A stretch of 62,882 nt of DNA, counting the filler, from Guillardia theta CCMP2712 (taxonomy: Eukaryota > Protista > Cryptophyta), in the NCBI RefSeq assembly GCF_000315625.1. It is 5 parts of 5 records of this genome, joined end to end, with 100 filler letters (N's around TTAATTAATTAA, not from the genome) between each part and the next. Parts side by side here need not be neighbours in the genome. Positions count along the whole stretch, not along the records: positions 20,569 to 45,229 come from NW_005434633.1; 4 more parts are not named here. One strand, written 5' to 3'. The first letter of the stretch is position 1. Each line of letters opens with the position of its first letter. Of the stretch, positions 25,285 through 45,437 are shown in pieces. A program made the position numbers and the translations under genes. Under the pieces are notes generated by a model, which was given only the letters and a program-made list of their open reading frames with translations, was not told where the DNA came from and did not search any database.

Positions 25285-25285
<1 letters not shown>

Positions 25286-28182
25286 CAGTCCATCCTGACA
25301 GACACGTCACTCAGCCACAGCGAGACGGACGAGTAGTCGACGTCGCCTTCATAGCGATGCACCTCCTTATCGTTCACCCCGATCACTATCATCGCCGGGA
25401 ACGTCTCGATGGTGTACAGCTCGCAGAGCAAGTCGTTACTCTTGGGGACGACAGCAAACTGGAAGACCTCCTGGAACAGGAGCGACATGTAGCTCCAGAT
25501 CTGCGGCGTCGTCTCCAACTCAACGAAGAGGATGGCGAGGGGGAGCGAGCGGTCGGCGACCTCTGCCATGTCCTGCGAGCGAATGACGGGGAGGTCCTTG
25601 GAGGGAGCTGAGAAGTCCACGACCTCGTCCTCGTGCAAGGCGACGACTAGAAACTTGCAGAGCTCTAGGAGGGAGATCTTGCCTTGGAACACCTTAACGG
25701 CATCCTGGTTCGGAAACTTGTGGAGGATGAGGCGAGGGAGGAGGACGGGATCTATCCCATACTCCTTCATCATCTCCTCCTCGTCCACATGGACGCAGCC
25801 GAAGACGATCCTGTGACGAAAGATTCTGGCAGCGTAGGAGAAGAGCTTCGGGAGGCTCATTTTCGCTGTGAAGAGCATGACGTGCGGCCTGTCCGTCCTG
25901 TGGGCTCGGAACTCCAGCAGGCGCTGATGGTTCAGCCACATCCAAAGATCGTCGTCCTCTCGCACTCCTCCTCCTATGGACATCTGACTCATTCCGAAGG
26001 ATCCGGAGGAGCGGAACGAAAGTCTCGACCGTTCGTGAGCATGGAGGTTGGTATCGGACATGCTCCTCTCGAGTCCCTTCCTCCACTCCTCGCTCCTCTC
26101 CTTCCCTCGGAGCACATCGACGGCCCTGTGCCTGAAAGATACGTTGGTCCTCGACCCGTTGCTGCTGCCCGATGGTGCCGAGAGGAAAGGAGGCGCAGGG
26201 ACCTCGAGCTCTTCCTTGCCTTCCTTCTCTCCCTCCGACACTTTCGTCTCCTCCCCCTCCTCCTTCCTCCTCGTGGGCGACTTGGTCAAGCTCGTTACAG
26301 CCTCCGTCACAGCATAGCCGAGCATCGCCATCAGAGCAAGGGCGAGCACAACGGCGTGCAGAGGGTTCTCTGCAGGGTGTGTAGAGAGGAAGGAGACGAG
26401 GACCAGAGCGGGAGGGAGAAGCTTTGCAAGCACGACGAGAGGAGAGAATCTGATCAGGAGCAAGACAGCAAACAGCGGGAAGATCAGCACCGGGTTCCAC
26501 AGGAGCACTCCCTCCACCCACTTGCCGATGCTCGTACACTCAGGGGAAATCCATGAGACCCAGGCCTCCACGAACCGCCGGAGGAGGCTGGCCAGCATCC
26601 GCAGCATCCCATGGCAGTGCGAGGAGGAGAGGAGGTGGCTCAGCTGTGTGATCTCGTGGCAGATCATATCAAGAGGGAGCATATTGAGGATCCCAGAAGT
26701 TATGGCGACCTCCCTCGGGCTGCTGAGGATGGCGAGGAGGCCGCGGGAGAGGAGGGGGCAGGAGAGGTAGACCTCGAACACGATGCGGATGAGCACGTCG
26801 ACTTGCATCACGTACAGCAGCAGGTAGTAGTCCCGAAACACCAGGAAGATGCTGTCAGGCTTGCAACGGTTCCAACCTGCCTCTATCCTCGCCTTGGTCG
26901 CGTCAAAGATCCACTTGAGGTTCTCCTCCAGCCTTGCCTTCTCCCGCACGTTTTCGGGCAGACCGGCATCACCCAGCACGTGCTGGTCGAACGTAGGCAG
27001 CAGCTCCTCGATCACGTTGCTGCAGGCCTGCACTAGAGTCTTCATGGAGGGAGGGAGGTCAGAGCAGTCGCGCAGGGGCATCTCCACGTCCTCCAACTCC
27101 CTCACAGCCCGAGCAGTGATGTTGTGCCTGGCAGATTCAGCCCTCAAGGAGATGAGAGCGCGAGCAGCTGCATGCACGTCGTTCAAGCTAGGAACGAGAT
27201 TCTCCACCAGGTTGGCAAGCTCTCCCCCTGTCACCAGACGGCTCAGCATCCCCCTCTTGGGCATGACTTGGTTGATGAAACCCCGTATCCTCTCGATGAG
27301 GGACGTGTAGTCTCCGTCCAGCTCTTCGTACGCCAGCTCTGCCAGCTCCGTCTCCGCCTTGTACGGTCTGGTCTTGGGGTAGGGAAGGCAAAAGATTCTG
27401 TTCTCCATCATCCTCTCCTGAACATAGTCGATCACCCGGTCGTGCATAACCAGCTCCTCGTTCGCTTCGTCTCCCAGCTTCCTCAAGAACCTTGACGGGT
27501 AGTCCTCGCAGCGATCTCTGCTGCTGTAACTCTGCACCAGCCACACGATGCTGCTGGCTAGAAACTGCTCGTCACTGATGTTCCTGAACACCTCATCGAA
27601 CATCACTACGTCGCCCAAGAATTCCACGTCCAGCTTGTTCACTTTGCGCATCGTGTTGTAGAAGAAGACTGACGACAGCATGGCAGTCAAGGCAACCATC
27701 TTCGTATCGTAGACCTTCGTCCCTCCTGGCGCTCCCAAACCTTCCGAGTCGACCAAGATCGTCATCGTACCCTTCGGCACGCATGTCTTGTTGTTTGACT
27801 CGCAAGCGCCCTGCTCTTCCTCCTCCTTTTTCTCCTCCTCCTCCTCGGGCAGCTGGTGGATCCACAGGCCTTTAGTGAACCCCTCGTCTCCACTGCTGAC
27901 CTCGAACACCCTCGACCTTCCTACCAGCGAGTTCATGAAGAAACTCTTGCCCGTCCGCGCTTGCCCGACGATCCCTATGGTCTTGAGCGTTTGATTGATG
28001 ACACTCGGGGAGCGCAGGAAGGCGATGCCTTCAGGATCGACTTCCAACTTCCCCGAACGATCTCGAACGAGCGATCGAGACCTGATAGGCGTCGATTCAT
28101 TCACATCTTGGTGACCGTGTACTCCTGCCCCGTACGAGGAAAGGACAAAGGACAGAAGGAGCGTTCCAGTAAGCAGAGTCAT
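25285..28182 (-). CDS. Guanylate-binding protein/atlastin-family GTPase with signal peptide, TM segments and C-terminal thioredoxin-like folds; intronless
   Basis: G1 GQARTGKSFFMNSL, G2 FTKGLW, G3 LVDSEGL, and LSSVFFYN. Hydrophobic cluster at about aa 455-630. C-terminus FGCV..EYGI..LPRLI and LYTIETFPAMIVI..HRYEGDVDYSSVSLWL. Confidence 0.85.
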
Positions 28183-28901
28183 CGCTCCAGCCACAGGTTT
28201 GTTGTAGACTTTGTAGTTTCTCTCTGGTGTTCAGGATTTGCCTTCTTGGGGTTATCTCATATTCCACCCTTTACCTACCCTCCTTCTAGCCAGTTTCAAT
28301 TAGCAACATTCGTTCCGTTTCTTCCCTCGCCCATTCACCATACTCTCAACCTCAAAGACACTTCAATCTTCTCTTCTCATAGTTGCCATCACTTTCACAC
28401 CTTCATCTCTCACCGATCATGATCTCCTCTCCTCTCCTCCTCTTCTCTCCTCCATATCTTACACCCTGCATTTCGCCCTCCCTTCTTCCCCACCTCTTGT
28501 GGGGGACCAAAAAAACAGACTCGATTTTAAAGATCTTTTTTTCTCTTTTACAGACAAAAGCGTTTAATTCTTTTTTTTTAAACCCGCCCATCATCCGAGA
28601 TGTCCGAGTGCAGCCGGGCCGCCGGGGGGGGGGAGGGGCCGCCGGAGCCGCCGCCGCAAGCCGGGCCCGGTCCCACGGTGACCGCTGCACCGTTACAGGG
28701 TCTGATCGAGTCACTGGGGTCTGACTGCTCCGGATCCGTAGTAAGAGCACCATGTGACTCTGATGATAGTATCAGCGATCAACGTGTTTATTTACCATCA
28801 TTCCACGTAAATTTTCTCATCTAGTTAAGGTTACAGTCAATCAATTTAAAAGTGACGCTACTCAGTCAGCACAGGCGGCTCGGGGGGCTGCAAGAAGAGG
28901 A

Positions 28902-36279: not shown

Positions 36280-36288
36280 TTACTTTTG

Positions 36289-36380
<92 letters not shown>

Positions 36381-39300
36381 CAGCAGCATCAGCATCATCA
36401 GCAGCATGTAGAGCATAAAGCTCGTCAAGTTCTGTTCCCGCCTCTGGATTGAGCGCAATCTCTCCAGCAGATAAGCTCTCCCCCAGCACACCCTTGACAA
36501 CATCCCAACGCCCTCGTCGCCTTGCATGGTCGGCGCAGGTTCTGCCGTAGGCATCCTTCCTAGCGACGAGCTCTGTTCCTCCGGCATTCACCAGGGCTCT
36601 GACCACATCTACACAACCCATCGAACATGCTGCATGCAACAACGTCCTCCCATGCTCATCCGGAGACATGAACGTCTGCCAGCGCTCCTGAAGCTCTGCC
36701 AGCAACAAACTTCCTTGCGTGTTGCCGGGGCACATGATGAGGAAGCACATTCTCAGAGCACGAAGGTAGACATCGTCACACTTTAGGTACTGAGACATTC
36801 TTTTCGCCGTGTCTGTCTGAAGGTAGACTTCTGGACCAACCAGCCTCAAGGCTGTTAAAATAGTCCCTGCGTTCTCCTCGTTCCTCATCTCTTCAAAGCA
36901 CATCAGGGATTTGTTGTCCTTGCACAGTAAGATTTCCTTTCCAAAAAGCTGCACCAATACCTCAAGTGCAGCCTGGCTTCCACTTGTACACGCCTCGTGC
37001 GCGCACGTCCTACCATTCTTGTCCGCGCACATGACCAGGTCCTTGCCCCCTAGCTCCAGCATGGCCTTCAGCCCCTCGACGTCTCCACTCGTACACGCCT
37101 CGTGGAGGCAGGTCCTACCATTCTCGTCCGCGCACATGACCAGGTCCTTGCCCCCTAGCTCCAGCATGGCCTTCAGCCCCTCGACGTCTCCACTTGTACA
37201 CGCCTCGTGGAGGCAGGTCCTACCATTCTCGTCCGCGCACATGACCAGGTCCTTGCCCCCTAGCTCCAGCATGGCCTTCAGCCCCTCGACGTCTCCACTC
37301 GTACACGCCTCGTGCGCGCACGTCCTACCATTCTTGTCCGCGCACATGACCAGGTCCTTGCCCCCTAGCTCCAGCATGGCCTTCAGCCCCTCGACGTCTC
37401 CACTCGTACACGCCTCGTGGAGGCAGGTCCTACCATTCTCGTCCGCGCACATGACCAGGTCCTTGCCCCCTAGCTCCAGCATGGCCTTCAGCCCCTCGAC
37501 GTCTCCACTTGTACACGCCTCGTGCGCGCACGTCCTACCATTCTTGTCCGCGCACATGACCAGGTCCTTGCCCCCTAGCTCCAGCATGGCCTTCAGCCCC
37601 TCGACGTCTCCACTCGTACACGCCTCGTGCGCGCATGTCCTACCATTCTTGTCCGCGCACATGACCAGGTCCTTGCCCCCTAGCTCCAGCATGGCCTTCA
37701 GCCCCTCGACGTCTCCACTCGTACACGCCTCGTGGAGGCAGGTCCTACCATTCTTGTCCGCGCACATGACCAGGTCCTTGCCCCCTAGCTCCAGCATGGC
37801 CTTCAGCCCCTCGACGTCTCCACTCGTACACGCCTCGTGGAGGCAGGTCCTACCATTCTCGTCCGCGCACATGACCAGGTCCTTGCCCCCTAGCTCCAGC
37901 ATGGCCTTCAGCCCCTCGACGTCTCCACTCGTACACGCCTCGTGGAGGCAGGTCCTACCATTCTTGTCCGCGCACATGACTAGATCTTTGCCCGCGATCT
38001 CCAAAAGGATCTTCAGAACGACAGAGTGTTTGTTTTCTGCAGCTTCATGCGCGCAGGTCCTGCCGTGTAAGGATCGAGTCAAGATCAACTTGACCCCTCC
38101 AGCTTCAACGGCGACTCTCATGGCGTCCAGTCGTCCGCGTGAGCAGGCGTCGTGCAGGCATGTTCTACCTTCGTCGTCTTGTATGTGAACAATTTCGTTG
38201 CCCGCTACCTCTATCAGCGCCTTCAGCACCTCAGCAGACCCGTTCTTACAAGCCTCATGCGCACCGGTCCTCTGGTTTCTCCGAGACATCAAGGCAAGCT
38301 TTTTGCCTCCGACCCCCAACACTACCCTGAGCGCGTCCGCGTGTCCGTTGTCGCATGCTAAGTGCGCGCAAGTCGACGAGTTGTTTCTGATTTCCCAGAA
38401 AAGCTCTTCATTGCCTGCCTCAGCCGCGAGCTTTACAAGCGTCTTCAAGACCTCCGCTTGTCCGTGCTCACAGGCAACATGGGCACAGGTGTTTCCCAGA
38501 TCATCTTTCCACTTTAGAATCTCAGTTCCCTTGAGTTCAACAAGCAGCAAAACTAGATGCACCTGCCCGTACTCACACGCTGCATGCAGCACGGTTGTCC
38601 TGGTCTTGACGGTTTGAAACACCAATGTTGCTCCCGACTCAATCAGCTTTCGTGTTGTGTGAGTGTATCCCAAGGAGATTGCAAGTTCGATGTAGCTGCT
38701 CCTCGTGTCACTGTACCTCATGCTTCCATCCAGCTTATGGCCTGCGAGCTTGAGAATCTGTAGCAGATCCGCCTGTCCCCTCTCGACAGCTTCAGCAGCG
38801 GCGGATAGTTCCCATCGATTGATCGTTGCCGGCCAGAGACCCAGCAGCTTGCATGTCTCAGCAGCTGCCTCTGCTCGCTCCTGGTCGTCAGTGTCGACAG
38901 CCCATACCTTCCTTGTCAGGTGAGCTAGCTTGCGCTGGTGCACCATCCTCAGATCCTCCCTGACTAATCGGTCGCACGCGTCTCCAGACGTGTGCTTCAA
39001 CCAGAAGTCTAACTTGTTCATGGACATCTTCTTCAGATTCGCTGCCTGGGTGAGAGCTTGGATATGGAACGCGTCATCATTGAATTCATGAGCCTTCGAC
39101 TCCCGGTACACCCTCAACAACTCATTGCACTCGTCGGTGATAGACTGCTTCAACTTCCAATGATTACCTTCATGTATGTCCCAATCGCTCTTGGAGAGTC
39201 GTTCGTTTACCTCCGCAGACGCCATCACGACATTGAGATTGGACTCAATATCCTCCACTATGTTGCTGATCAAGGCCATGAAGAGCTGTTTCCTCTTTCC

Positions 39301-40886
39301 CAGTATGTCTTCGATCGTCGAACAAGTCATGTTGGAGTTGATCTTCAAAGGCAACACACGGACCAGCACTCCGTTCCCGAGCTCCCGCATTTGAGGCTTC
39401 TTGATGAGTTCGAGGTAGGACAGCGGGGGATACAGTATTTCCTCTTCATCTGGGTACTGAGAAAGGAACTTGACCGAAGCTCCCCGGTCGACGGCCCCAC
39501 AAGAGATTTCAAACACAGTCGGGTGATCCCCTCTCGTGGCATACTCCAGCGCAACTTGGACGTCCGTCGTGGTACTCATCATGCCCAGCTCGACTCCTCC
39601 TGACACTCCGTACTGATCCTCCTCCAGGAACTCCCGAGGAATCTGCAGGCCATGAAACCCGCGGTAGACCACTCTCTCCTTGGGCAGGACCGTCACCTGG
39701 GACAACTTGATGATGCCGCTGACGATGCAGAAGATCGTAGTCGTGTACTTGTTCCCTCTGAGGGCAGCGACCTCGGCTGATTTAGCTCCGTTGCTGATGT
39801 CGGAAGGGTTCCGCAGGACTGTGTTGTACTTGACGAACATCGGACCTGCTCGGGCATTGAAGTAAGATGCAACACGTCTCATGTAGGACACAGCATGTTT
39901 CATGTGAGACACTACATGTCTTCAGTAAGACACAACATGTCTTATGTAAGTTACAACATGTATCAAGGGAGACCCTCTGACTGTCAAAGTACAACAACTT
40001 CCTCCTCACCTGTGTAGAGCTGGAGGGCGATCACCTCCTCCTTCGCAAGTCCTGCCATGATGACGTGGGGCAACTTAAGGATGTCCTCTGCCGCTTGGAT
40101 ACGCCTCTTGCCCACAGAGTGCTGCTTCCTCCTCTCTGCGTCCATGACAGAGGACCACTCCTTCATCGGAGTTGTCGTGGATCCATAGTTGTGCGAGAAG
40201 AACTCAACATCGGAATCCCCTTTCATGCAGTGCTCGTTTCTCATCCCTGCCATCAGATCGGCCGTTGGTAACCCGATGTCCTGGATAAGCCCATCGTGAA
40301 ACTTCGACAACTTCCCAAAGACAGCCATCTTGCCCTCCTCCATGCAAAATTTGGTGTTCTCGCAGGCATCTGCTCTTGTGTTCCTTTCGCTCTTGTCTCT
40401 GGACCTCACTTTCATCTTCGCTGCCACTGCCATCAACACATCGGCAAACTCCGTCACCCACTGTTTGTCGTCACAATCGCACAATCCGGCGAGCGGACTG
40501 TCTGGCGTTCCTCCTGGGATGAGTTCAGCTAGAGACTGCAGGATGCCCTGCTGGGCAAGAGCTTGAGACTTCAGGCTGATTTCCCATTCCCTAGCGATAG
40601 CGTCCCGATACTCTGCAAAAGATTCCTGGCGTTCAGAATGAGCGCGGAGAATGTCCTTGGCTATGTTCAAGTCTATGCTGAGCTTGCTCTCCAAGGAAGA
40701 GACGCTCCCAGCGCCTCCAACCTGCCCTGCATTCTTATACCCGTCGGACAAGTCAGCTAACTCTGAAAGCACGCCAGTCGGGAGCGCCCAACTTGTATCA
40801 TCGGGGGATACCTTGTTCTTGCGCGGAGAGCTCCCTTGATGCCTGATGCAGAAAGCTCTCTTCGCTCCCTTGATGCAACTCATCAT
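36280..40886 (-). CDS. R-S-E clade (ARTC-type) mono-ADP-ribosyltransferase fused to a long ankyrin repeat array; 2 exons (intron 39846-40009), about 1480 aa
   Basis: Splicing gives IALQLYTG|PMFVKYNTVLR. Catalytic motifs are VYRG, MSTT and SQYPDEEEILYPP. Many G-x-T-x-[LA]-H-x-A-C ankyrin units follow. Confidence 0.9.
36977..37980 (-). repeat. 105-bp coding tandem repeat x~10 (35-aa ankyrin units), near-identical at DNA level
   Basis: Unit GKDLVMCAD[K/E]NGRTC[L/A]HEACTSGDVEGLKAMLELG is visible in both DNA and protein. Confidence 0.97.
39862..39966. repeat. 21-bp degenerate tandem repeat x5 (GTAAGACACAACATGTCTTAT) inside the ART intron
   Basis: Five aligned units with an ACATGT-like palindromic core. 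Confidence 0.8.
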
Positions 40887-41546: not shown

Positions 41547-44500
41547 ATGCTGGCTCGTTGCGGGCTCATAGCCTCGCTCGTGTGCCATGCCTTCGCTCAG
41601 TATGATGGGATGACGGTCATCGGAGTCTCTGCCCAGACGTTTTCATACATGGGCAAGAATGGTCTGATCCAGCAAGATCCGAACTCCCAAAAGCTCACTT
41701 CGATCTACCGGCTGAACTTTCAAACAGTCGAAAGTGTGTTGATACAAGTTCTGCAGTCATCCAATGAAATTTACATAGTATCAAAAGGAGGGAATTATAA
41801 GGTTCTTTCTAGCTCATTGACAAGTCTCATCTCATCGTTTGCTGGAGAGACGAGTCTAGGGAAAATTATTTTGCAAAATGGAATTGTGTACGATCCCTCA
41901 ACGCAAACATCTACTGCAATTGATACCAGCAATCAGTTTCAAGCAAGTTTTGTCAGTAGAACTTTTTTTGCTGGCTTTGTTTCATCAACAGATTCAACAC
42001 AGCAATACAAAATCTACGACACGAACTCGGCCGGGCGATTCAGCTTTGGAACTTGCAGTGGGCCAATAATGGTTGCGCTTGACAGCACAACCATTCTCTT
42101 TGGTAGTTGCTCATCAAATTCCGATGCGCTGCTGGACACAAAAACGGGAGCGCGATCAGCCGTTTCATCTCCCCTCCAGTTCTCTTTTTCTTTTTCTGCC
42201 GGACTACATGCAGAAGTTGATGATGGAGTCATTTTCTTGTCTTCATCGTGCCCCTTTGGTGGAAACATGAGCGATCGATTTCCTTCAGGAAGCAACTACC
42301 GAATCTGCCATGTTTCTCCTGCTGGAGTAGTTCAAGGTCTTTGTGACAGCGACTTTGCAATTTCTCAGTATTCGTACTATGGGTTCTCTGCAAACCGACC
42401 AGCGCAATTGTTTGTTTCGAAACAATACGTAGTGGTCATGGAGGTCCAATCTGTCGGTTACGTCAAGTTAGGCGATCCCACCAAGAGAGTAGCATATACA
42501 GATACGAACACCATTTTATGCATGGCACTTGTAGATGATGTGATCTACTTCCAGGTAGAAAAGACTGATGGAAAGCTCTACCTTGGAATGTATGATATGC
42601 CAAGTGCAAAACAAATCCTTTTCTCGCCTGTGGACACTCGTTGGGATTACCTGATTCCCTTATCTTTTCCTCTCAACGTGCTACTGCCCCTTAAAACTTA
42701 CAGCGGTGGATCGAACAGCACAAGCACTGCAGCTATCGTTGGTGGATCGATCGGAGGCGTTGTTGCCTTGTTGCTCCTCTTCCTTGGCTTTCGGTTTGCG
42801 AGACAGGGGAAGTCCGGGGTACCCTTGCTTGATGTTCTGTTTGGATGCTGTGACAGGCGGAGAGCAAAACGATCTACTGCTCAGACGAACAAGGTGCAGA
42901 AAAAAGGTTCAAACACCGCGATTGAAAGCGCAGAATTAAACTTTGCTTCTTCTCAATTTTCTAATACCGACTCCAAGATGTCGGAGCTGGGAGAGATCGT
43001 TTTGACAGGGACTGACTTGTCGTCCATGGATGACAAGACGTCAGACCTCGAAGAGATGGTGTTCACAGGAACGCCTTGGGTACAAGATGTTGCTGGAAGT
43101 GTTGCCAGCTGTGTCCTCAGCATCGGACAGGCAGCTCCAATCTTCGGAAGTATCTTCGTGATCCTAGGCGAGATCAAGAAACATGTTGATACCTACCGAG
43201 CTGCCGAGCAAGAGTGTCAGAGAATGTCAGCATGGTGCTCGGGAGTGATGGTCAGCATTGCTAGACTCGCCGAGGAAGTGAAGAGCCTGGATGAGAGCAC
43301 AGAACAACTGCTCGACCAAGTTGTTCTCAAGCTCCAACAGTTTCGTGATCTTATCACTTCTCGCTTGACCTCCCAAGGGATTGGAGGCCGTTTGTATGCC
43401 TTCTGGACATCCAGCGGCTTCCTGGTAAGTGTTGCTCTCTGAACAGCAACCCTTCTGATGATGACGTGGCAGAGCCAGTCCAAGGAAGTGCAAGCACAGC
43501 TGGAGCTGGTCATGAGCAACCTGATGCGCCGACTGCAAGCAGACACGCGTGTGGAGGTCAACCAGATCTTGCAGCGCTCAGCTCTCCTGCCGCAGATGGA
43601 CAAGCAGCTGACTGGCATCATGGATCAGCTGCAGGACCTGGGAGGTGAAGCTCGAGGAGCTTCTTGTGTTGTTCTGACAGTCAGCTATGTCAGGTGAGAT
43701 TCAAAGCCTGCGGAATGATGTGAACAAGGTGTTGGAACAAGCAAGTCGACTCAGCGGGAAAGAAGCTTCCAAGAAGCGACGATCGTCCAACCTTGAGCGC
43801 TTCTCTATCGCCGCATCGCAGATGCAGATCGAGGCAGAGCCCTTCGCTAAGGGAGGGTCCTGCCTGGTGTACCGGGCAAAATACTCCAACATGCTTGTCT
43901 GTGCCAAAGTGTACGACATGCGAGGATACAACATGACTCAGATGCGTCAAGCTCAAGACAACTTCTCGCGCGAGATTGACTTGCTCTGCCGCTTGTCTCA
44001 CCCCTACGTCCTCCGCATGTTCGGCATCTGTGCAGACAACCCCACGAGTTCCGATCCTTGTGACTGAACTAGCTCAGGTACGAGGAGAGGGGCGAAGAGA
44101 CTGAGAAACATGTTGGACCATCGCACGAGGGTTTATGACGAGAGCGCAGGGAGGAGATCTCCGAGACTACATCGACGCTCGCGGGGTGCAAAGTGAGGAA
44201 GAACGTATCAGGATCATCACGGAGCTTGCTTTCGGCCTCGATTATCTACACGCCAAGGATGTAAGAAGCAGCTTCGATGCTACTCAGCTGCCAAGACTGA
44301 CAACCTGCAGATTGCACATAGGGATTTCAAGAGTCGGAACGTCCTCCTGACCATGGACAAGACTTGCAAGATCTGCGACTTCGGGTTGTCGAAGGAGACA
44401 GGCAACGACACGACCGCAGGTTCAAGCCTCGGCACTCCTGCATGGTCAGCCCCTGAGATCTTGAGAGGAGAATGTCGAGAGGTAAGATAAGATGCGAGCC

Positions 44501-44906
44501 AGAGTCGCTGGTTCCCTGCCCTTGTTTCCAGTAGCTGAAGCTGACGATCAGGTCCAAGAGTACCTCCGAGCTGACGTGTACAGCTTCGGGGTTGTCGTGT
44601 GGGAGGTTCGCGCATAAGCGTCGCACGATCTAGAGTGACCTGGTTGCCAGCTTGAGACGGGCCGCGTTCCCCATTCCGAATGCGTCAACGTGATCGAGGT
44701 CAGTGCGCTCCCGCTGACTTGTCAACCGTCATCACCTGACATCTTTTTACCGTCAGATCATCACCGTCGTTTGTGTTCAGCACAAGATGCTGGAAATCCC
44801 TTCGACATCCTCGGAAAAGATCTCAGAGCTCATGAAGAGATGCCTGGTTCCCGAGGGCGCGAGCAGACCCAGCATGACGCAGATCCTAGAGCTCATCGGG
44901 TCGTGA
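41547..44906 (+). CDS. Receptor-like TKL protein kinase: signal peptide, ~375-aa beta-rich ectodomain, one TM helix, MLKL-N-like helical domain, kinase; apparent +1 frameshift at about 44040
   Basis: Signal MLARCGLIASLVCHAFA and TM IVGGSIGGVVALLLLFLGF. Helical APIFGSIFVILGEIKKHVDTYRAAEQECQRM. Kinase motifs AKGG, VCAK, HRDFKSRN, DFG, GTPAWSAPE, DVYSFG and RPSM. Stop TGA at 44904-44906. Confidence 0.85.
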
Positions 44907-45009: not shown

Positions 45010-45437
45010 GGACCATCAGCCTCAGTCCAACTCCCGATGTGACTCCGGACCGTGCTCGGCAGCCGGGCCGCGGCCGCGGCCGCGGCCGCCCCGCGTGACT
45101 CAGTGACCGTACCGTACTGCCACGGTACACGGTACTGCCGGGCAGCCCGGCGGGCCGGGGCCCGGGAGTCGGAGGCAGTAGGCCGTCAGGTAGGCCGTGC
45201 CATCTGGAATGATGTGGGGGCCGCATGCGNNNNNNNNNNNNNNNNNNNNNNNNNNNNNNNNNNNNNNNNNNNNTTAATTAATTAANNNNNNNNNNNNNNN
45301 NNNNNNNNNNNNNNNNNNNNNNNNNNNNNTCCCTCTCTCCCTCCATCCCCGCTCCCTTCCTCCCTTCCTCCGTCCCTCCCCCCCTCCCTCCCTCTCCCTT
45401 CTCTCCCTCTCCCTCTCCCTCCGTCCCTCCTCTCCTG

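What the first reader, a model, noticed from the sequence alone, without database searches (positions are those of the whole stretch)
41547..44906. Transmembrane receptor kinase with an internal MLKL-N-like helical bundle
Seen in sequence: signal peptide, beta-strand-rich ectodomain (possibly a propeller), one TM helix and a linker. These are followed by an amphipathic helical domain (APIFGSIFVILGEIKKHVDTYRAAEQECQRMSAWC..LDQVVLKLQQFRDLI..RLYAFWTS), a coiled-coil brace-like segment and a kinase retaining the catalytic K, HRD and DFG. Established knowledge: animal and plant MLKLs are cytosolic four-helix-bundle + brace + pseudokinase proteins. Inference: a surface receptor is fused directly to an MLKL-like executioner with an active kinase, an architecture I do not recognise as described.
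Basis: partly seen in the sequence, partly recalled or inferred. Interest (0 to 1): 0.78.

Follow-up and report, generated by a model that had tools for sequence, protein, structure and literature searches.

The report
Membrane-anchored MLKL-like receptor kinase, frameshifted
This algal-type gene joins a cell-surface receptor and one membrane-spanning helix to a module built like the necroptosis executioner MLKL (helical bundle, brace, kinase); I found no description of this architecture, and this particular copy carries a frameshift in its kinase.

Summary
Exon 1 (41547-43424) is one 626-codon ORF. It encodes a signal peptide, a 375-residue orphan ectodomain, one TM helix, a linker and most of a helical domain. 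Seven short GT-AG introns follow, with a coiled coil and a TKL-type kinase that keeps Lys, HRD, DFG and APE.

Four lines of evidence support an MLKL_N-like helical domain:
- Five relatives give sub-threshold Pfam MLKL_N hits in one register (best E 1.1e-5).
- Human MLKL is the best natural PDB hit of the family profile (E 0.11).
- An AF2 model of a 38-41% identical relative (pLDDT 85.6) matches MLKL executioner domains first (Z 10.9, rmsd 3.4 A).
- Language-model features point to MLKL_N/RPW8 clusters.

About 44 cluster representatives form a family. Some come from the cryptophyte Baffinella frigidus. Ectodomains vary (fasciclin, ephrin-receptor-like), and intact single-ORF members carry TM, bundle and kinase together.

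Corrections:
- The TM helix is at aa 393-418.
- A propeller fold is unsupported.
- This copy has one extra base near 44049-50. It shifts the frame in the kinase N-lobe and gives a stop at 44065. Independent DNA reads confirm it.
- No transcript evidence was obtained.

Function as a receptor-coupled membrane executioner or ion-flux trigger is inferred, not shown.

The parts
41547..41600 (+). Start codon and signal-peptide-like N-terminus (aa 1-18)
   Evidence: Hydrophobic N-terminus ending in an AFA-Q type site, read from the translation. Heuristic only; no predictor was run.
41601..42722 (+). Orphan ectodomain (aa 19-392), Ser/Thr/Gly-rich, 6 Cys, 2 N-glycosylation sequons
   Evidence: No Pfam hit, no word-search relatives, no PDB sequence hit, ESM features at chance level, no internal repeats.
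42723..42800 (+). Single transmembrane helix (aa 393-418), followed by basic residues and a Cys-Cys pair at aa 434-435
   Evidence: Kyte-Doolittle 19-residue window peaks at 2.44. Relatives have a TM helix at the same place.
42801..43100 (+). Cytosolic acidic/Ser-rich linker with a duplicated short E-x-V-x-T-G-T motif
   Evidence: Translation. The linker is variable among relatives.
43101..43424 (+). MLKL_N-like bundle, first part. Helix a0 43101-27, a1 43137-90, a2 43209-74, a3 43296-370, cap helix 43386-409, start of a4 43413-24. Includes the E-C-x-R-x-S-x-W-C and A-F-W-T-S motifs.
   Evidence: Helices mapped from the AF2 model of P0004 through alignment A2. MLKL matches.
43425..43472 (+). 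Intron 1 (48 nt, GTAAGT...CAG, in-frame stop)
   Evidence: Homologs align across it with an exact 16-residue gap. Exons 1 and 2 abut without a gap in A2.
43473..43644 (+). Exon 2: rest of helix a4 (to 43526) and start of the long brace-like helix (43539 onward)
43645..43693 (+). Intron 2 (GTGAAG donor). The acceptor is at 43684 (40 nt) or 43693 (49 nt); both keep the frame.
   Evidence: Read from the sequence. The frame change is required by homolog alignment. The 43684 AG is lost in L001 while 43693 is kept. One low-depth contig of a possible RNA run is unspliced here.
43694..44077 (+). Exon 3: coiled-coil linker, then the kinase N-lobe (degenerate Gly loop A-K-G-G-S-C, catalytic Lys 43906-08, aC Glu). 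One extra base at about 44049-50 shifts the frame and gives a premature TGA at 44065-67. The homologous b5/hinge reading continues in the +1 frame to 44077.
   Evidence: DNA reads show no indel.
44150..44260 (+). Exon 4: kinase aD-aE region
   Evidence: Pfam Pkinase positions 78-117; coordinates.
44311..44481 (+). Exon 5: catalytic loop HRD (44317-25, H-R-D-F-K-S-R-N), DFG (44377-85), activation segment, APE (44449-57)
   Evidence: Pfam Pkinase E 1.9e-8; coordinates.
44552..44605 (+). Exon 6: kinase aF (D-V-Y-S-F-G)
44651..44698 (+). Exon 7: kinase C-lobe segment
   Evidence: Open frame between GT-AG introns; colinear with P0058 and P0055.
44757..44906 (+). Exon 8: kinase aH-aI (R-P motif) and stop codon 44904-06
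   Evidence: Pfam PK_Tyr_Ser-Thr positions 223-256; coordinates.

Best explanation
The locus belongs to a protist (cryptophyte-type) family of single-pass receptor kinases. Their cytosolic half is an MLKL-type module: a four-helix bundle related to MLKL_N/RPW8/HeLo-like domains, a long brace-like helix, and a TKL kinase of the MLK/Raf/CTR1 type.

Shown:
- the domain order;
- that ectodomain, TM helix and bundle are fused in one exon;
- that the family exists with variable ectodomains;
- the MLKL-like fold, on a relative used as proxy;
- conserved catalytic motifs.

Inferred mechanism: ligand binding clusters the ectodomains, and the kinases trans-autophosphorylate. That step would replace RIPK3. 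The brace and kinase then stop restraining the bundle. The bundle already sits at the inner leaflet, and its hydrophobic Gly-rich a0/a1 helices engage the membrane. The result would be ion flux or permeabilisation, meaning cell death or a Ca2+-type alarm at the site of contact.

In this genome the copy has a 1-nt frameshift in the kinase N-lobe. It is most likely a young pseudogene. At best it encodes a receptor with bundle and brace but no catalytic core.
For: Architecture:
- Exon 1 is one 626-codon ORF holding the signal-like segment, ectodomain, TM helix and bundle.
- Kinase Pfam hits occur in every downstream exon.
- Homologs are colinear across both upstream introns.

Family:
- 44 representatives were found among 1.84 billion proteins.
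- P0062 has Ephrin_rec_like, TM, bundle and full kinase in one ORF. P0054 has three Fasciclin domains, TM and bundle. P0031 (Baffinella frigidus) has five Ephrin_rec_like domains, TM and bundle.
- L003 has Fasciclin, TM, bundle and the start of a kinase at one locus.

MLKL likeness:
- Pfam MLKL_N is the family matched by most members: 5 of 31, E 1.1e-5 to 0.016, always profile positions 2-127.
- The family profile aligns positions 30-153 to human MLKL residues 10-131 at E 0.11, pairing E-C-x-R-L with Q-C-R-R-L and F-W-T-S with F-L-T-A-S.
- The AF2 model has pLDDT 85.6 and pTM 0.77.
- The Foldseek top hit is 2msv (probability 1.0).
- VIA-align gives Z 10.9, rmsd 3.4-3.5 A over 128-136 residues for human MLKL, 8.9 for mouse MLKL and 8.9 for AtMLKL3.
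- ESM features place MLKL_N clusters nearest (0.91, 191 of 256).

Kinase: it is closest to CTR1, MLK1, ZAK and RAF.

Frameshift.
Against: - No sequence hit to MLKL_N reaches a curated or conventional threshold. The best is 25.5 bits against a cutoff of 27. The window's own exon 1 gives no MLKL_N hit.
- Structural Z scores near 10 are within the range that helical bundles reach by chance. The HIP1R THATCH core ties at Z 10.5.
- The confident model is of a 38-41% identical relative, not of the window protein. The window's single-sequence model was poor (pLDDT 60.7).
- MLKL's bundle has a free N-terminus, whereas here it is tethered. The kinase keeps catalytic motifs, unlike the MLKL pseudokinase.
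- No functional data exist for any family member.
- This copy is frameshifted and almost unexpressed in the RNA sampled.
Confidence: 0.5

Rival explanations
1. The helical domain is an ordinary juxtamembrane helical bundle plus coiled coil. It dimerises and regulates a receptor kinase, and the output is phosphorylation only. On this reading the resemblance to MLKL_N is a common helical arrangement or very distant ancestry with no membrane-attacking role.
For: - All sequence matches to MLKL_N are sub-threshold.
- THATCH and talin bundles score as well structurally.
- The kinase looks catalytically competent in intact relatives, so it could signal by itself.
- Plant MLKLs and MCAfunc-domain proteins have roles other than killing (PMC8049495; own knowledge for AtMLKLs).
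Against: - Four independent kinds of evidence converge on MLKL_N rather than on any other helical family.
- The bundle-brace-TKL kinase order copies MLKL.
- The a0/a1 helices are unusually hydrophobic (KD 2.0), like the membrane-inserting N-termini of HeLo-type domains (own knowledge).
- The same bundle also heads a cytosolic WW/helicase protein (P0020). That fits an effector module better than a receptor-specific linker.
Confidence: 0.25
2. The bundle works like the plant MCAfunc domain. Held at the membrane, it gates or forms a Ca2+-permeable path, so the receptor gives a rapid ion signal rather than death.
For: - ESM-feature neighbours include clusters carrying both MLKL_N and MCAfunc.
- The MCAfunc N-terminal region is reported to have Ca2+-influx activity and is partnered with kinases in monocots (PMC8049495).
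- A constitutively membrane-tethered killer would be dangerous, which favours a graded output.
Against: - No Pfam MCAfunc hit was seen for any member.
- MCAfunc is reported as streptophyte-specific (PMC8049495).
- No data are available on ion flux.
Confidence: 0.15
3. At this locus nothing works. The gene is a decaying member of a fast-evolving family, and the features are relics.
For: - A 1-nt frameshift gives a premature stop upstream of five introns, a typical NMD substrate. Independent DNA data confirm it.
- The 89% identical copy L001 has three in-frame stops, an 8-nt insertion and a broken ectodomain ORF.
- Only 1 RNA read was found in about 6% of a 12.8-Gb RNA-seq run.
Against: - The 1.9-kb exon 1 and all downstream exons are otherwise free of stops, so any inactivation is recent.
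- A truncated product (receptor, bundle and brace without kinase) could still be made.
- This rival concerns this copy only, not the family.
Confidence: 0.55
4. There are two genes: an ectodomain/TM/helical protein, and a separate downstream kinase gene.
For: - The only contig of a possible RNA run that covers intron 2 is unspliced.
- No spliced read was obtained.
Against: - Bundle, coiled coil and kinase are one uninterrupted ORF in P0039, P0055, P0057, P0058 and P0062.
- Exon 2, exon 3 and the kinase are colinear with these relatives.
- There is no start context or promoter-sized gap between the parts.
Confidence: 0.04

Closest known systems
Animal MLKL (human and mouse; PDB 2msv, 6zvo, 4btf)
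   Same: - N-terminal-type four-helix bundle with a cap helix before a4.
- Brace-like helix.
- Kinase fold of the TKL/MLK type.
- Best structural and best natural sequence-profile match.
- Motif pairs in the same register.
   Different: - Here the bundle lies behind a signal peptide, an ectodomain and a TM helix, so its N-terminus is tethered.
- There is an extra hydrophobic a0 helix.
- The kinase keeps Lys/HRD/DFG/APE rather than being a pseudokinase.
- There is no evidence of a RIPK3-type activator.
- Sequence identity is about 13-16%.
Plant MLKLs (AtMLKL3, PDB 6ka4; wheat Pm13-type) and RPW8/CC_R domains
   Same: - HeLo/MLKL-type bundle, brace and kinase-like domain.
- AtMLKL3 aligns at Z 8.9 over 136 residues.
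- RPW8 and MLKL_N clusters are among the feature neighbours.
   Different: - The plant proteins are cytosolic and have no ectodomain or TM helix.
- They act with intracellular immune receptors.
Plant MCA1/2 and other MCAfunc (ARPK) domain proteins
   Same: - An MLKL_N-related N-terminal domain working at the plasma membrane.
- Kinase partners occur in some lineages (PMC8049495).
- Clusters with both annotations are feature neighbours.
   Different: - No Pfam MCAfunc hit here.
- MCA proteins have no ligand-type ectodomain and pair with PLAC8.
- MCAfunc is reported as streptophyte-specific.
Single-pass receptor kinases (plant RLK/Pelle, animal RTKs, brown-alga and oomycete receptor kinases)
   Same: - Signal peptide, variable ectodomain, one TM helix and a cytosolic kinase.
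- Ectodomain shuffling within the family (fasciclin, ephrin-receptor-like).
   Different: - A folded MLKL-type bundle and brace of about 190 residues sit between the membrane and the kinase.
- The kinase is nearest to MLK/Raf/CTR1, not to Pelle/IRAK or tyrosine kinases.
Fungal HeLo / HeLo-like (HET-S, HELLP) domains
   Same: - Helical-bundle cell-death domains whose hydrophobic N-terminal helix inserts into membranes (own knowledge).
- Fungal MLKL_N clusters are the top feature neighbours.
   Different: - The fungal domains are activated by amyloid templating or NLRs.
- They are not part of receptor kinases.
- No Pfam HeLo or Helo_like_N hit was seen.

Membership tests
MLKL (Pfam MLKL_N + kinase-like domain) | Sequence match to Pfam PF22215 MLKL_N at the gathering score (27 bits) | tested here: not met
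   The window's exon 1 gives no hit. The best relative, P0010, scores 25.5 bits (E 1.1e-5). Four more relatives score 15-20 bits. All align to profile positions 2-127.
MLKL (Pfam MLKL_N + kinase-like domain) | Four-helix-bundle fold of the executioner domain, with the cap helix before a4 | tested here: met
   Tested by proxy. The AF2 model of P0004:1-189 (38% identical to the exon-1 part, 33% to the exon-2 part) has pLDDT 85.6. MLKL NTDs rank first at Z 10.9, rmsd 3.4-3.5 A over 128-136 of 140-154 residues. Caveat: THATCH ties at Z 10.5 in the wide search.
MLKL (Pfam MLKL_N + kinase-like domain) | Brace helices linking the bundle to a C-terminal kinase fold | tested here: met
   The model has a long helix at residues 144-188. 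It corresponds to 43539 onward and runs into the kinase N-lobe.
MLKL (Pfam MLKL_N + kinase-like domain) | C-terminal domain is a pseudokinase lacking catalytic motifs | tested here: not met
   Lys, HRD, DFG and APE are present in the window's exons and in intact relatives. Only the Gly loop is degenerate. In the window the domain is broken by a frameshift instead.
MLKL (Pfam MLKL_N + kinase-like domain) | Soluble cytosolic protein with the bundle at a free N-terminus | tested here: not met
   A signal-like segment, a 375-aa ectodomain and a TM helix precede the bundle in the same exon.
MLKL (Pfam MLKL_N + kinase-like domain) | Activation by an upstream kinase, followed by oligomerisation and membrane permeabilisation | not testable with these tools
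   This needs cell-death, lipid-binding and liposome assays.
Single-pass receptor kinase | Signal peptide, ectodomain, one TM helix with positive-inside flank, cytosolic protein kinase | tested here: met
   Hydropathy and flanking charges; kinase Pfam hits. The same layout occurs in the intact relative P0062. The signal peptide was judged by eye only.
TKL group kinases (MLK/Raf/CTR1-like) | Closest similarity to TKL kinases and an H-R-D-[LF]-K-S-x-N catalytic loop | tested here: met
   The kinase of P0058 hits CTR1 at 4e-36, MLK1 at 1e-28, ZAK at 1e-26 and RAF at 1e-24. The window has H-R-D-F-K-S-R-N at 44317.
HeLo / Helo_like_N / RPW8 (Pfam) | Sequence match to PF14479, PF17111 or PF05659 | tested here: not met
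   None of these appeared among hits at E up to 1 for 31 members. RPW8-bearing clusters appear only as language-model neighbours.

The most novel reading that the evidence does not exclude
A whole necroptosis-like pathway is compressed into one membrane protein. An extracellular sensor, an activating kinase and an MLKL-type membrane executioner sit in one chain. Cryptophyte-type algae would use it, with shuffled ectodomains, as a surface-triggered suicide or ion-alarm system against viruses, parasites or non-self contact. This would show that MLKL-type executioners were coupled to cell-surface receptors in unicellular eukaryotes, independently of the animal RIPK3 and plant NLR routes.
Probability: 0.3. 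Interest if true: 0.85.

Novelty: new variant of a known kind. Interest (0 to 1): 0.68.

Why it matters
MLKL-type bundles are known as cytosolic executioners. In animals they are switched on by RIPK3, and in plants and fungi they work with intracellular receptors. A family in which the same module is wired directly behind a variable cell-surface receptor, with a kinase that looks active, would be a new way of coupling outside recognition to membrane attack or ion flux. It would extend MLKL-like immunity-type machinery to unicellular algae.

It also offers a simple system to ask how the kinase domain restrains the bundle, because sensor, switch and effector are in one chain. Seven literature searches found no description of this architecture. 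That only covers the open-access library searched.

For this genome the practical message is more modest: the copy is frameshifted and may be a pseudogene.

Tried and rejected
- Word-based homolog search with the whole of exon 1 found no hit. It samples only the first 500 residues, so it says the ectodomain is an orphan and nothing about the bundle.
- The single-sequence AF2 model of the window's exon-1 part of the bundle was poor (pLDDT 60.7), with long undivided helices. It was not used for fold search. This cost one of the two folding jobs, so the ectodomain could not be folded.
- The ESM Atlas fold search gave only weak bacterial helical proteins with TM below 0.5.
- ESM features for the ectodomain were at chance level, 0.81.
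- PDB sequence searches gave nothing for the ectodomain or for the window's bundle fragment alone.
- A larger family alignment (A3, 39 rows) did not improve the MLKL E-value in PDB (0.14).
- P0032 and P0036 from the big search are spurious. They are repetitive tail-fibre-like F-T-G-T motifs matching only the linker.
- I enumerated all GT/GC-AG splices that could bypass the frameshift. Every solution needs a 19-103 nt intron with a poor donor and deletes kinase strands b4 or b5, so all were rejected.
- No paralog of the bundle lies elsewhere in the piece 20569-45229.
- Other ORFs in the piece had no Pfam hits.
- RNA evidence was too thin to test the joins: 1 read in the RNA-seq sample, and two low-depth contigs of a run only guessed to be RNA, one of them unspliced over intron 2.
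All searches used single exons by reference or database relatives, and the fold evidence rests on a relative.
- The organism could not be named because run labels are coded. The only named relatives are from Baffinella frigidus CCMP2293.
Full report
**What is there**

The piece is eukaryotic, with GC 45-60%. On the + strand, one ORF of 626 codons runs from 41547 to a GTAAGT donor at 43425.

Its translation has these parts, in order:
- a short hydrophobic N-terminus (aa 1-18);
- a 375-residue Ser/Thr/Gly-rich region with six Cys and two N-glycosylation sequons;
- one strongly hydrophobic helix at aa 393-418 (Kyte-Doolittle peak 2.44), followed by Arg/Lys and a Cys-Cys pair;
- an acidic linker;

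A second, weaker hydrophobic peak (2.0) at aa 519-541 is the first helix pair of the helical domain.

Downstream I read seven short GT-AG introns of 40-72 nt, several with a CTGAC-like branch site. Exact borders come:
- Introns: 43425-43472; 43645-43684 (or -43693); 44078-44149; 44261-44310; 44482-44551; 44606-44650; 44699-44756.
- Stop codon: 44904-06.

Each downstream exon gives Pfam protein-kinase hits at successive profile positions. The catalytic Lys codon (43906-08), HRD (44317-25), DFG (44377-85) and APE (44449-57) are all present. Only the Gly loop is degenerate.

**Gene model support**

All searches used single exons by reference or database relatives.

tblastn of relatives onto the window shows an exact 16-residue gap at intron 1 and the frame change at intron 2. 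In alignment A2, exon 1 ends and exon 2 begins in adjacent columns, so the spliced product is colinear with relatives.

Transcript evidence could not be obtained. An RNA-seq run sampled at about 6% gave one read. Two low-depth contigs from a run only guessed to be RNA cover 42990-43157 and 43620-43781, and the latter is unspliced over intron 2.

The fusion of receptor, TM helix and most of the bundle needs no splicing, because it lies in one exon. The bundle-kinase fusion is a single ORF in P0039, P0055, P0057, P0058 and P0062.

**A break in this copy**

Exon 3 plus the base carried over from exon 2 is 394 nt, one more than a multiple of three. The N-lobe reads up to the b4 strand in one frame. 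The homologous b5/hinge segment, which ends in the conserved intron-flanking sequence, reads in the next frame.

Compared with the 89% identical metagenomic copy L001, the window has one extra base at about 44049-50. In frame this gives seven aberrant residues and TGA at 44065-67.

Raw ChIP-seq DNA reads (about 15x here) and contigs of a 2011 run show no indel, so this is not an assembly error. Every conceivable splice bypass removes conserved kinase strands.

L001 is itself decayed. It has three in-frame stops, an 8-nt insertion, a lost acceptor and a fragmented ectodomain ORF.

All other exons of the window gene are open. The break therefore looks recent. This copy is probably a young pseudogene or a truncated allele.

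**The helical domain**

Exon 1 alone gives no Pfam family and no PDB sequence hit.

A full HMMER scan of 1.84 billion representatives with aa 490-626 found 44 proteins, 20 of them below 1e-10. Two of the 44 are spurious repeat matches.

The relatives share these features:
- a conserved G-x-x-x-P-x-x-G hydrophobic helix;
- an E-E-C-x-R-L-S-V-W-C helix;
- an A-F-W-T-S turn;
- an L-P-x-M-D-x-K-L-D coiled coil.

Four kinds of evidence point to MLKL_N:

1. Pfam on each member. Scanning 31 members separately, MLKL_N (PF22215) is the family matched by most of them: five, with E from 1.1e-5 to 0.016. The hits always cover profile positions 2-127. All are below the 27-bit cutoff.
2. Family profile against PDB. 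The best natural hit is the human MLKL N-terminal domain at E 0.11. Profile positions 30-153 align to residues 10-131, and the two signature motifs pair with Q-C-R-R-L and F-L-T-A-S of MLKL. A larger alignment gave the same result.
3. Fold.
   - AF2 with alignment A2, using P0004:1-189 as first sequence (38% identical to the window's exon-1 part, 33% to its exon-2 part), gave pLDDT 85.6 and pTM 0.77.
   - The model has helices a0, a1, a2, a3, a cap helix, a4 and a 45-residue brace-like helix.
   - The Foldseek top hit in PDB is the MLKL NTD 2msv at probability 1.0 and E 0.036.
   - VIA-align ranks six MLKL entries first, at Z 10.9-8.9 and rmsd 3.4-3.6 A, with 114-138 residues spanning chain residues 1-146.
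   - In the search that does not depend on Foldseek, human MLKL (9.8), mouse MLKL (8.9) and Arabidopsis MLKL3 (8.9) are among the top five. The HIP1R THATCH core ties at 10.5 with worse rmsd.
   - Fold alone would therefore not be decisive.
4. Language-model features of the same segment. The nearest named clusters carry MLKL_N (0.91; 191 of 256 features). Clusters with MLKL_N, RPW8 and MCAfunc follow.

Together I put homology to the MLKL_N/RPW8-type bundle at about 0.8.

**The family**

The kinase is nearest to CTR1, MLK1, ZAK and RAF, so it belongs to the TKL group. Bundle, brace and MLK-like kinase together reproduce the MLKL layout.

Upstream parts vary between members:

| Member | Parts upstream of the kinase or beyond the bundle |
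|---|---|
| P0054 | three fasciclin domains, TM, bundle |
| P0014 / L003 | fasciclin domains, TM, bundle; a kinase N-lobe exon follows at the same locus |
| P0031 | five ephrin-receptor-like repeats, TM, bundle |
| P0062 | one ephrin-receptor-like repeat, TM, bundle and a complete kinase in one 821-residue ORF |
| P0028, P0017, P0056 | unknown ectodomains |
| P0020 | cytosolic: WW domain, bundle and a DEAD/ResIII helicase |

Named sources are only Baffinella frigidus (Cryptophyta sp. CCMP2293). The rest are metagenomes. One relative lies on a contig with FBPase and ferredoxin-type nitrite/sulfite reductase genes, which fits an alga. The window's own organism is coded in the run tables and I cannot name it.

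**Mechanism**

Shown: the architecture, the family, the fold likeness and the conserved catalytic motifs.

Inferred: by analogy with MLKL (established knowledge), the kinase domain and brace hold the bundle inactive until activation-loop phosphorylation. Here the receptor's own active kinase could provide that step after ligand-induced clustering. The bundle is already tethered at the inner leaflet and carries a hydrophobic Gly-rich a0/a1. It would then engage the membrane and cause permeabilisation or cation flux.

Two alternatives remain open. A graded Ca2+-type signal is possible, by analogy with the plant MCAfunc domain (PMC8049495). A purely regulatory dimerisation bundle is also possible.

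**Known or new**

Searches of the open literature found MLKL in animals, plant MLKLs, RPW8, fungal HeLo-like domains and MCAfunc. None described a TM-tethered receptor form or a cryptophyte family.

I rate it a new variant of a known kind. Interest is tempered by three things: the absence of any functional data, sub-threshold sequence statistics, and the frameshift in this copy.

Noticed in passing
window 36280-40886 (- strand): A large neighbouring gene encodes an N-terminal NAD:arginine ADP-ribosyltransferase (ART) domain followed by many ankyrin repeats (Ank_2 E 6e-88). The upstream ORF 39984-40886 seems to be its first exon.
   Followed up: partly
window 25285-28194 (- strand): A 969-codon ORF carries a guanylate-binding-protein (GBP) N-terminal GTPase domain (E 5e-20). 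With the ART-ankyrin gene and the MLKL-like receptor, this makes a stretch rich in immunity-type domains. No link between them was tested.
   Followed up: no
L001 (ENA ERZ930071 metagenome contig, 3483 nt): This copy of the same gene is 89% identical overall and about 99% identical over 43380-43900, introns included. It is decayed: three in-frame stops, an 8-nt insertion, a lost intron-2 acceptor and a fragmented ectodomain ORF. It lacks the window's extra base.
   Followed up: yes
P0020 (Baffinella frigidus KAJ1484036.1, partial): The same bundle occurs in a cytosolic protein between a WW domain and a DEAD/ResIII/Schlafen-like helicase. This suggests the bundle is a portable effector module that is also coupled to an intracellular nucleic-acid-handling sensor.
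   Followed up: partly
window 45062-45095: A GCGGCC-type hexamer repeat and GC-rich sequence lie just downstream of the gene's 3' end.
   Followed up: no
window 43645-43693: Two in-frame alternative acceptors lie 9 nt apart (43684 and 43693). Only the distal one is conserved in L001.
   Followed up: partly
L003 2310-2515: The intron between the coiled coil and the kinase in the fasciclin-type relative is filled with a TA/CA-rich microsatellite-like sequence.
   Followed up: no
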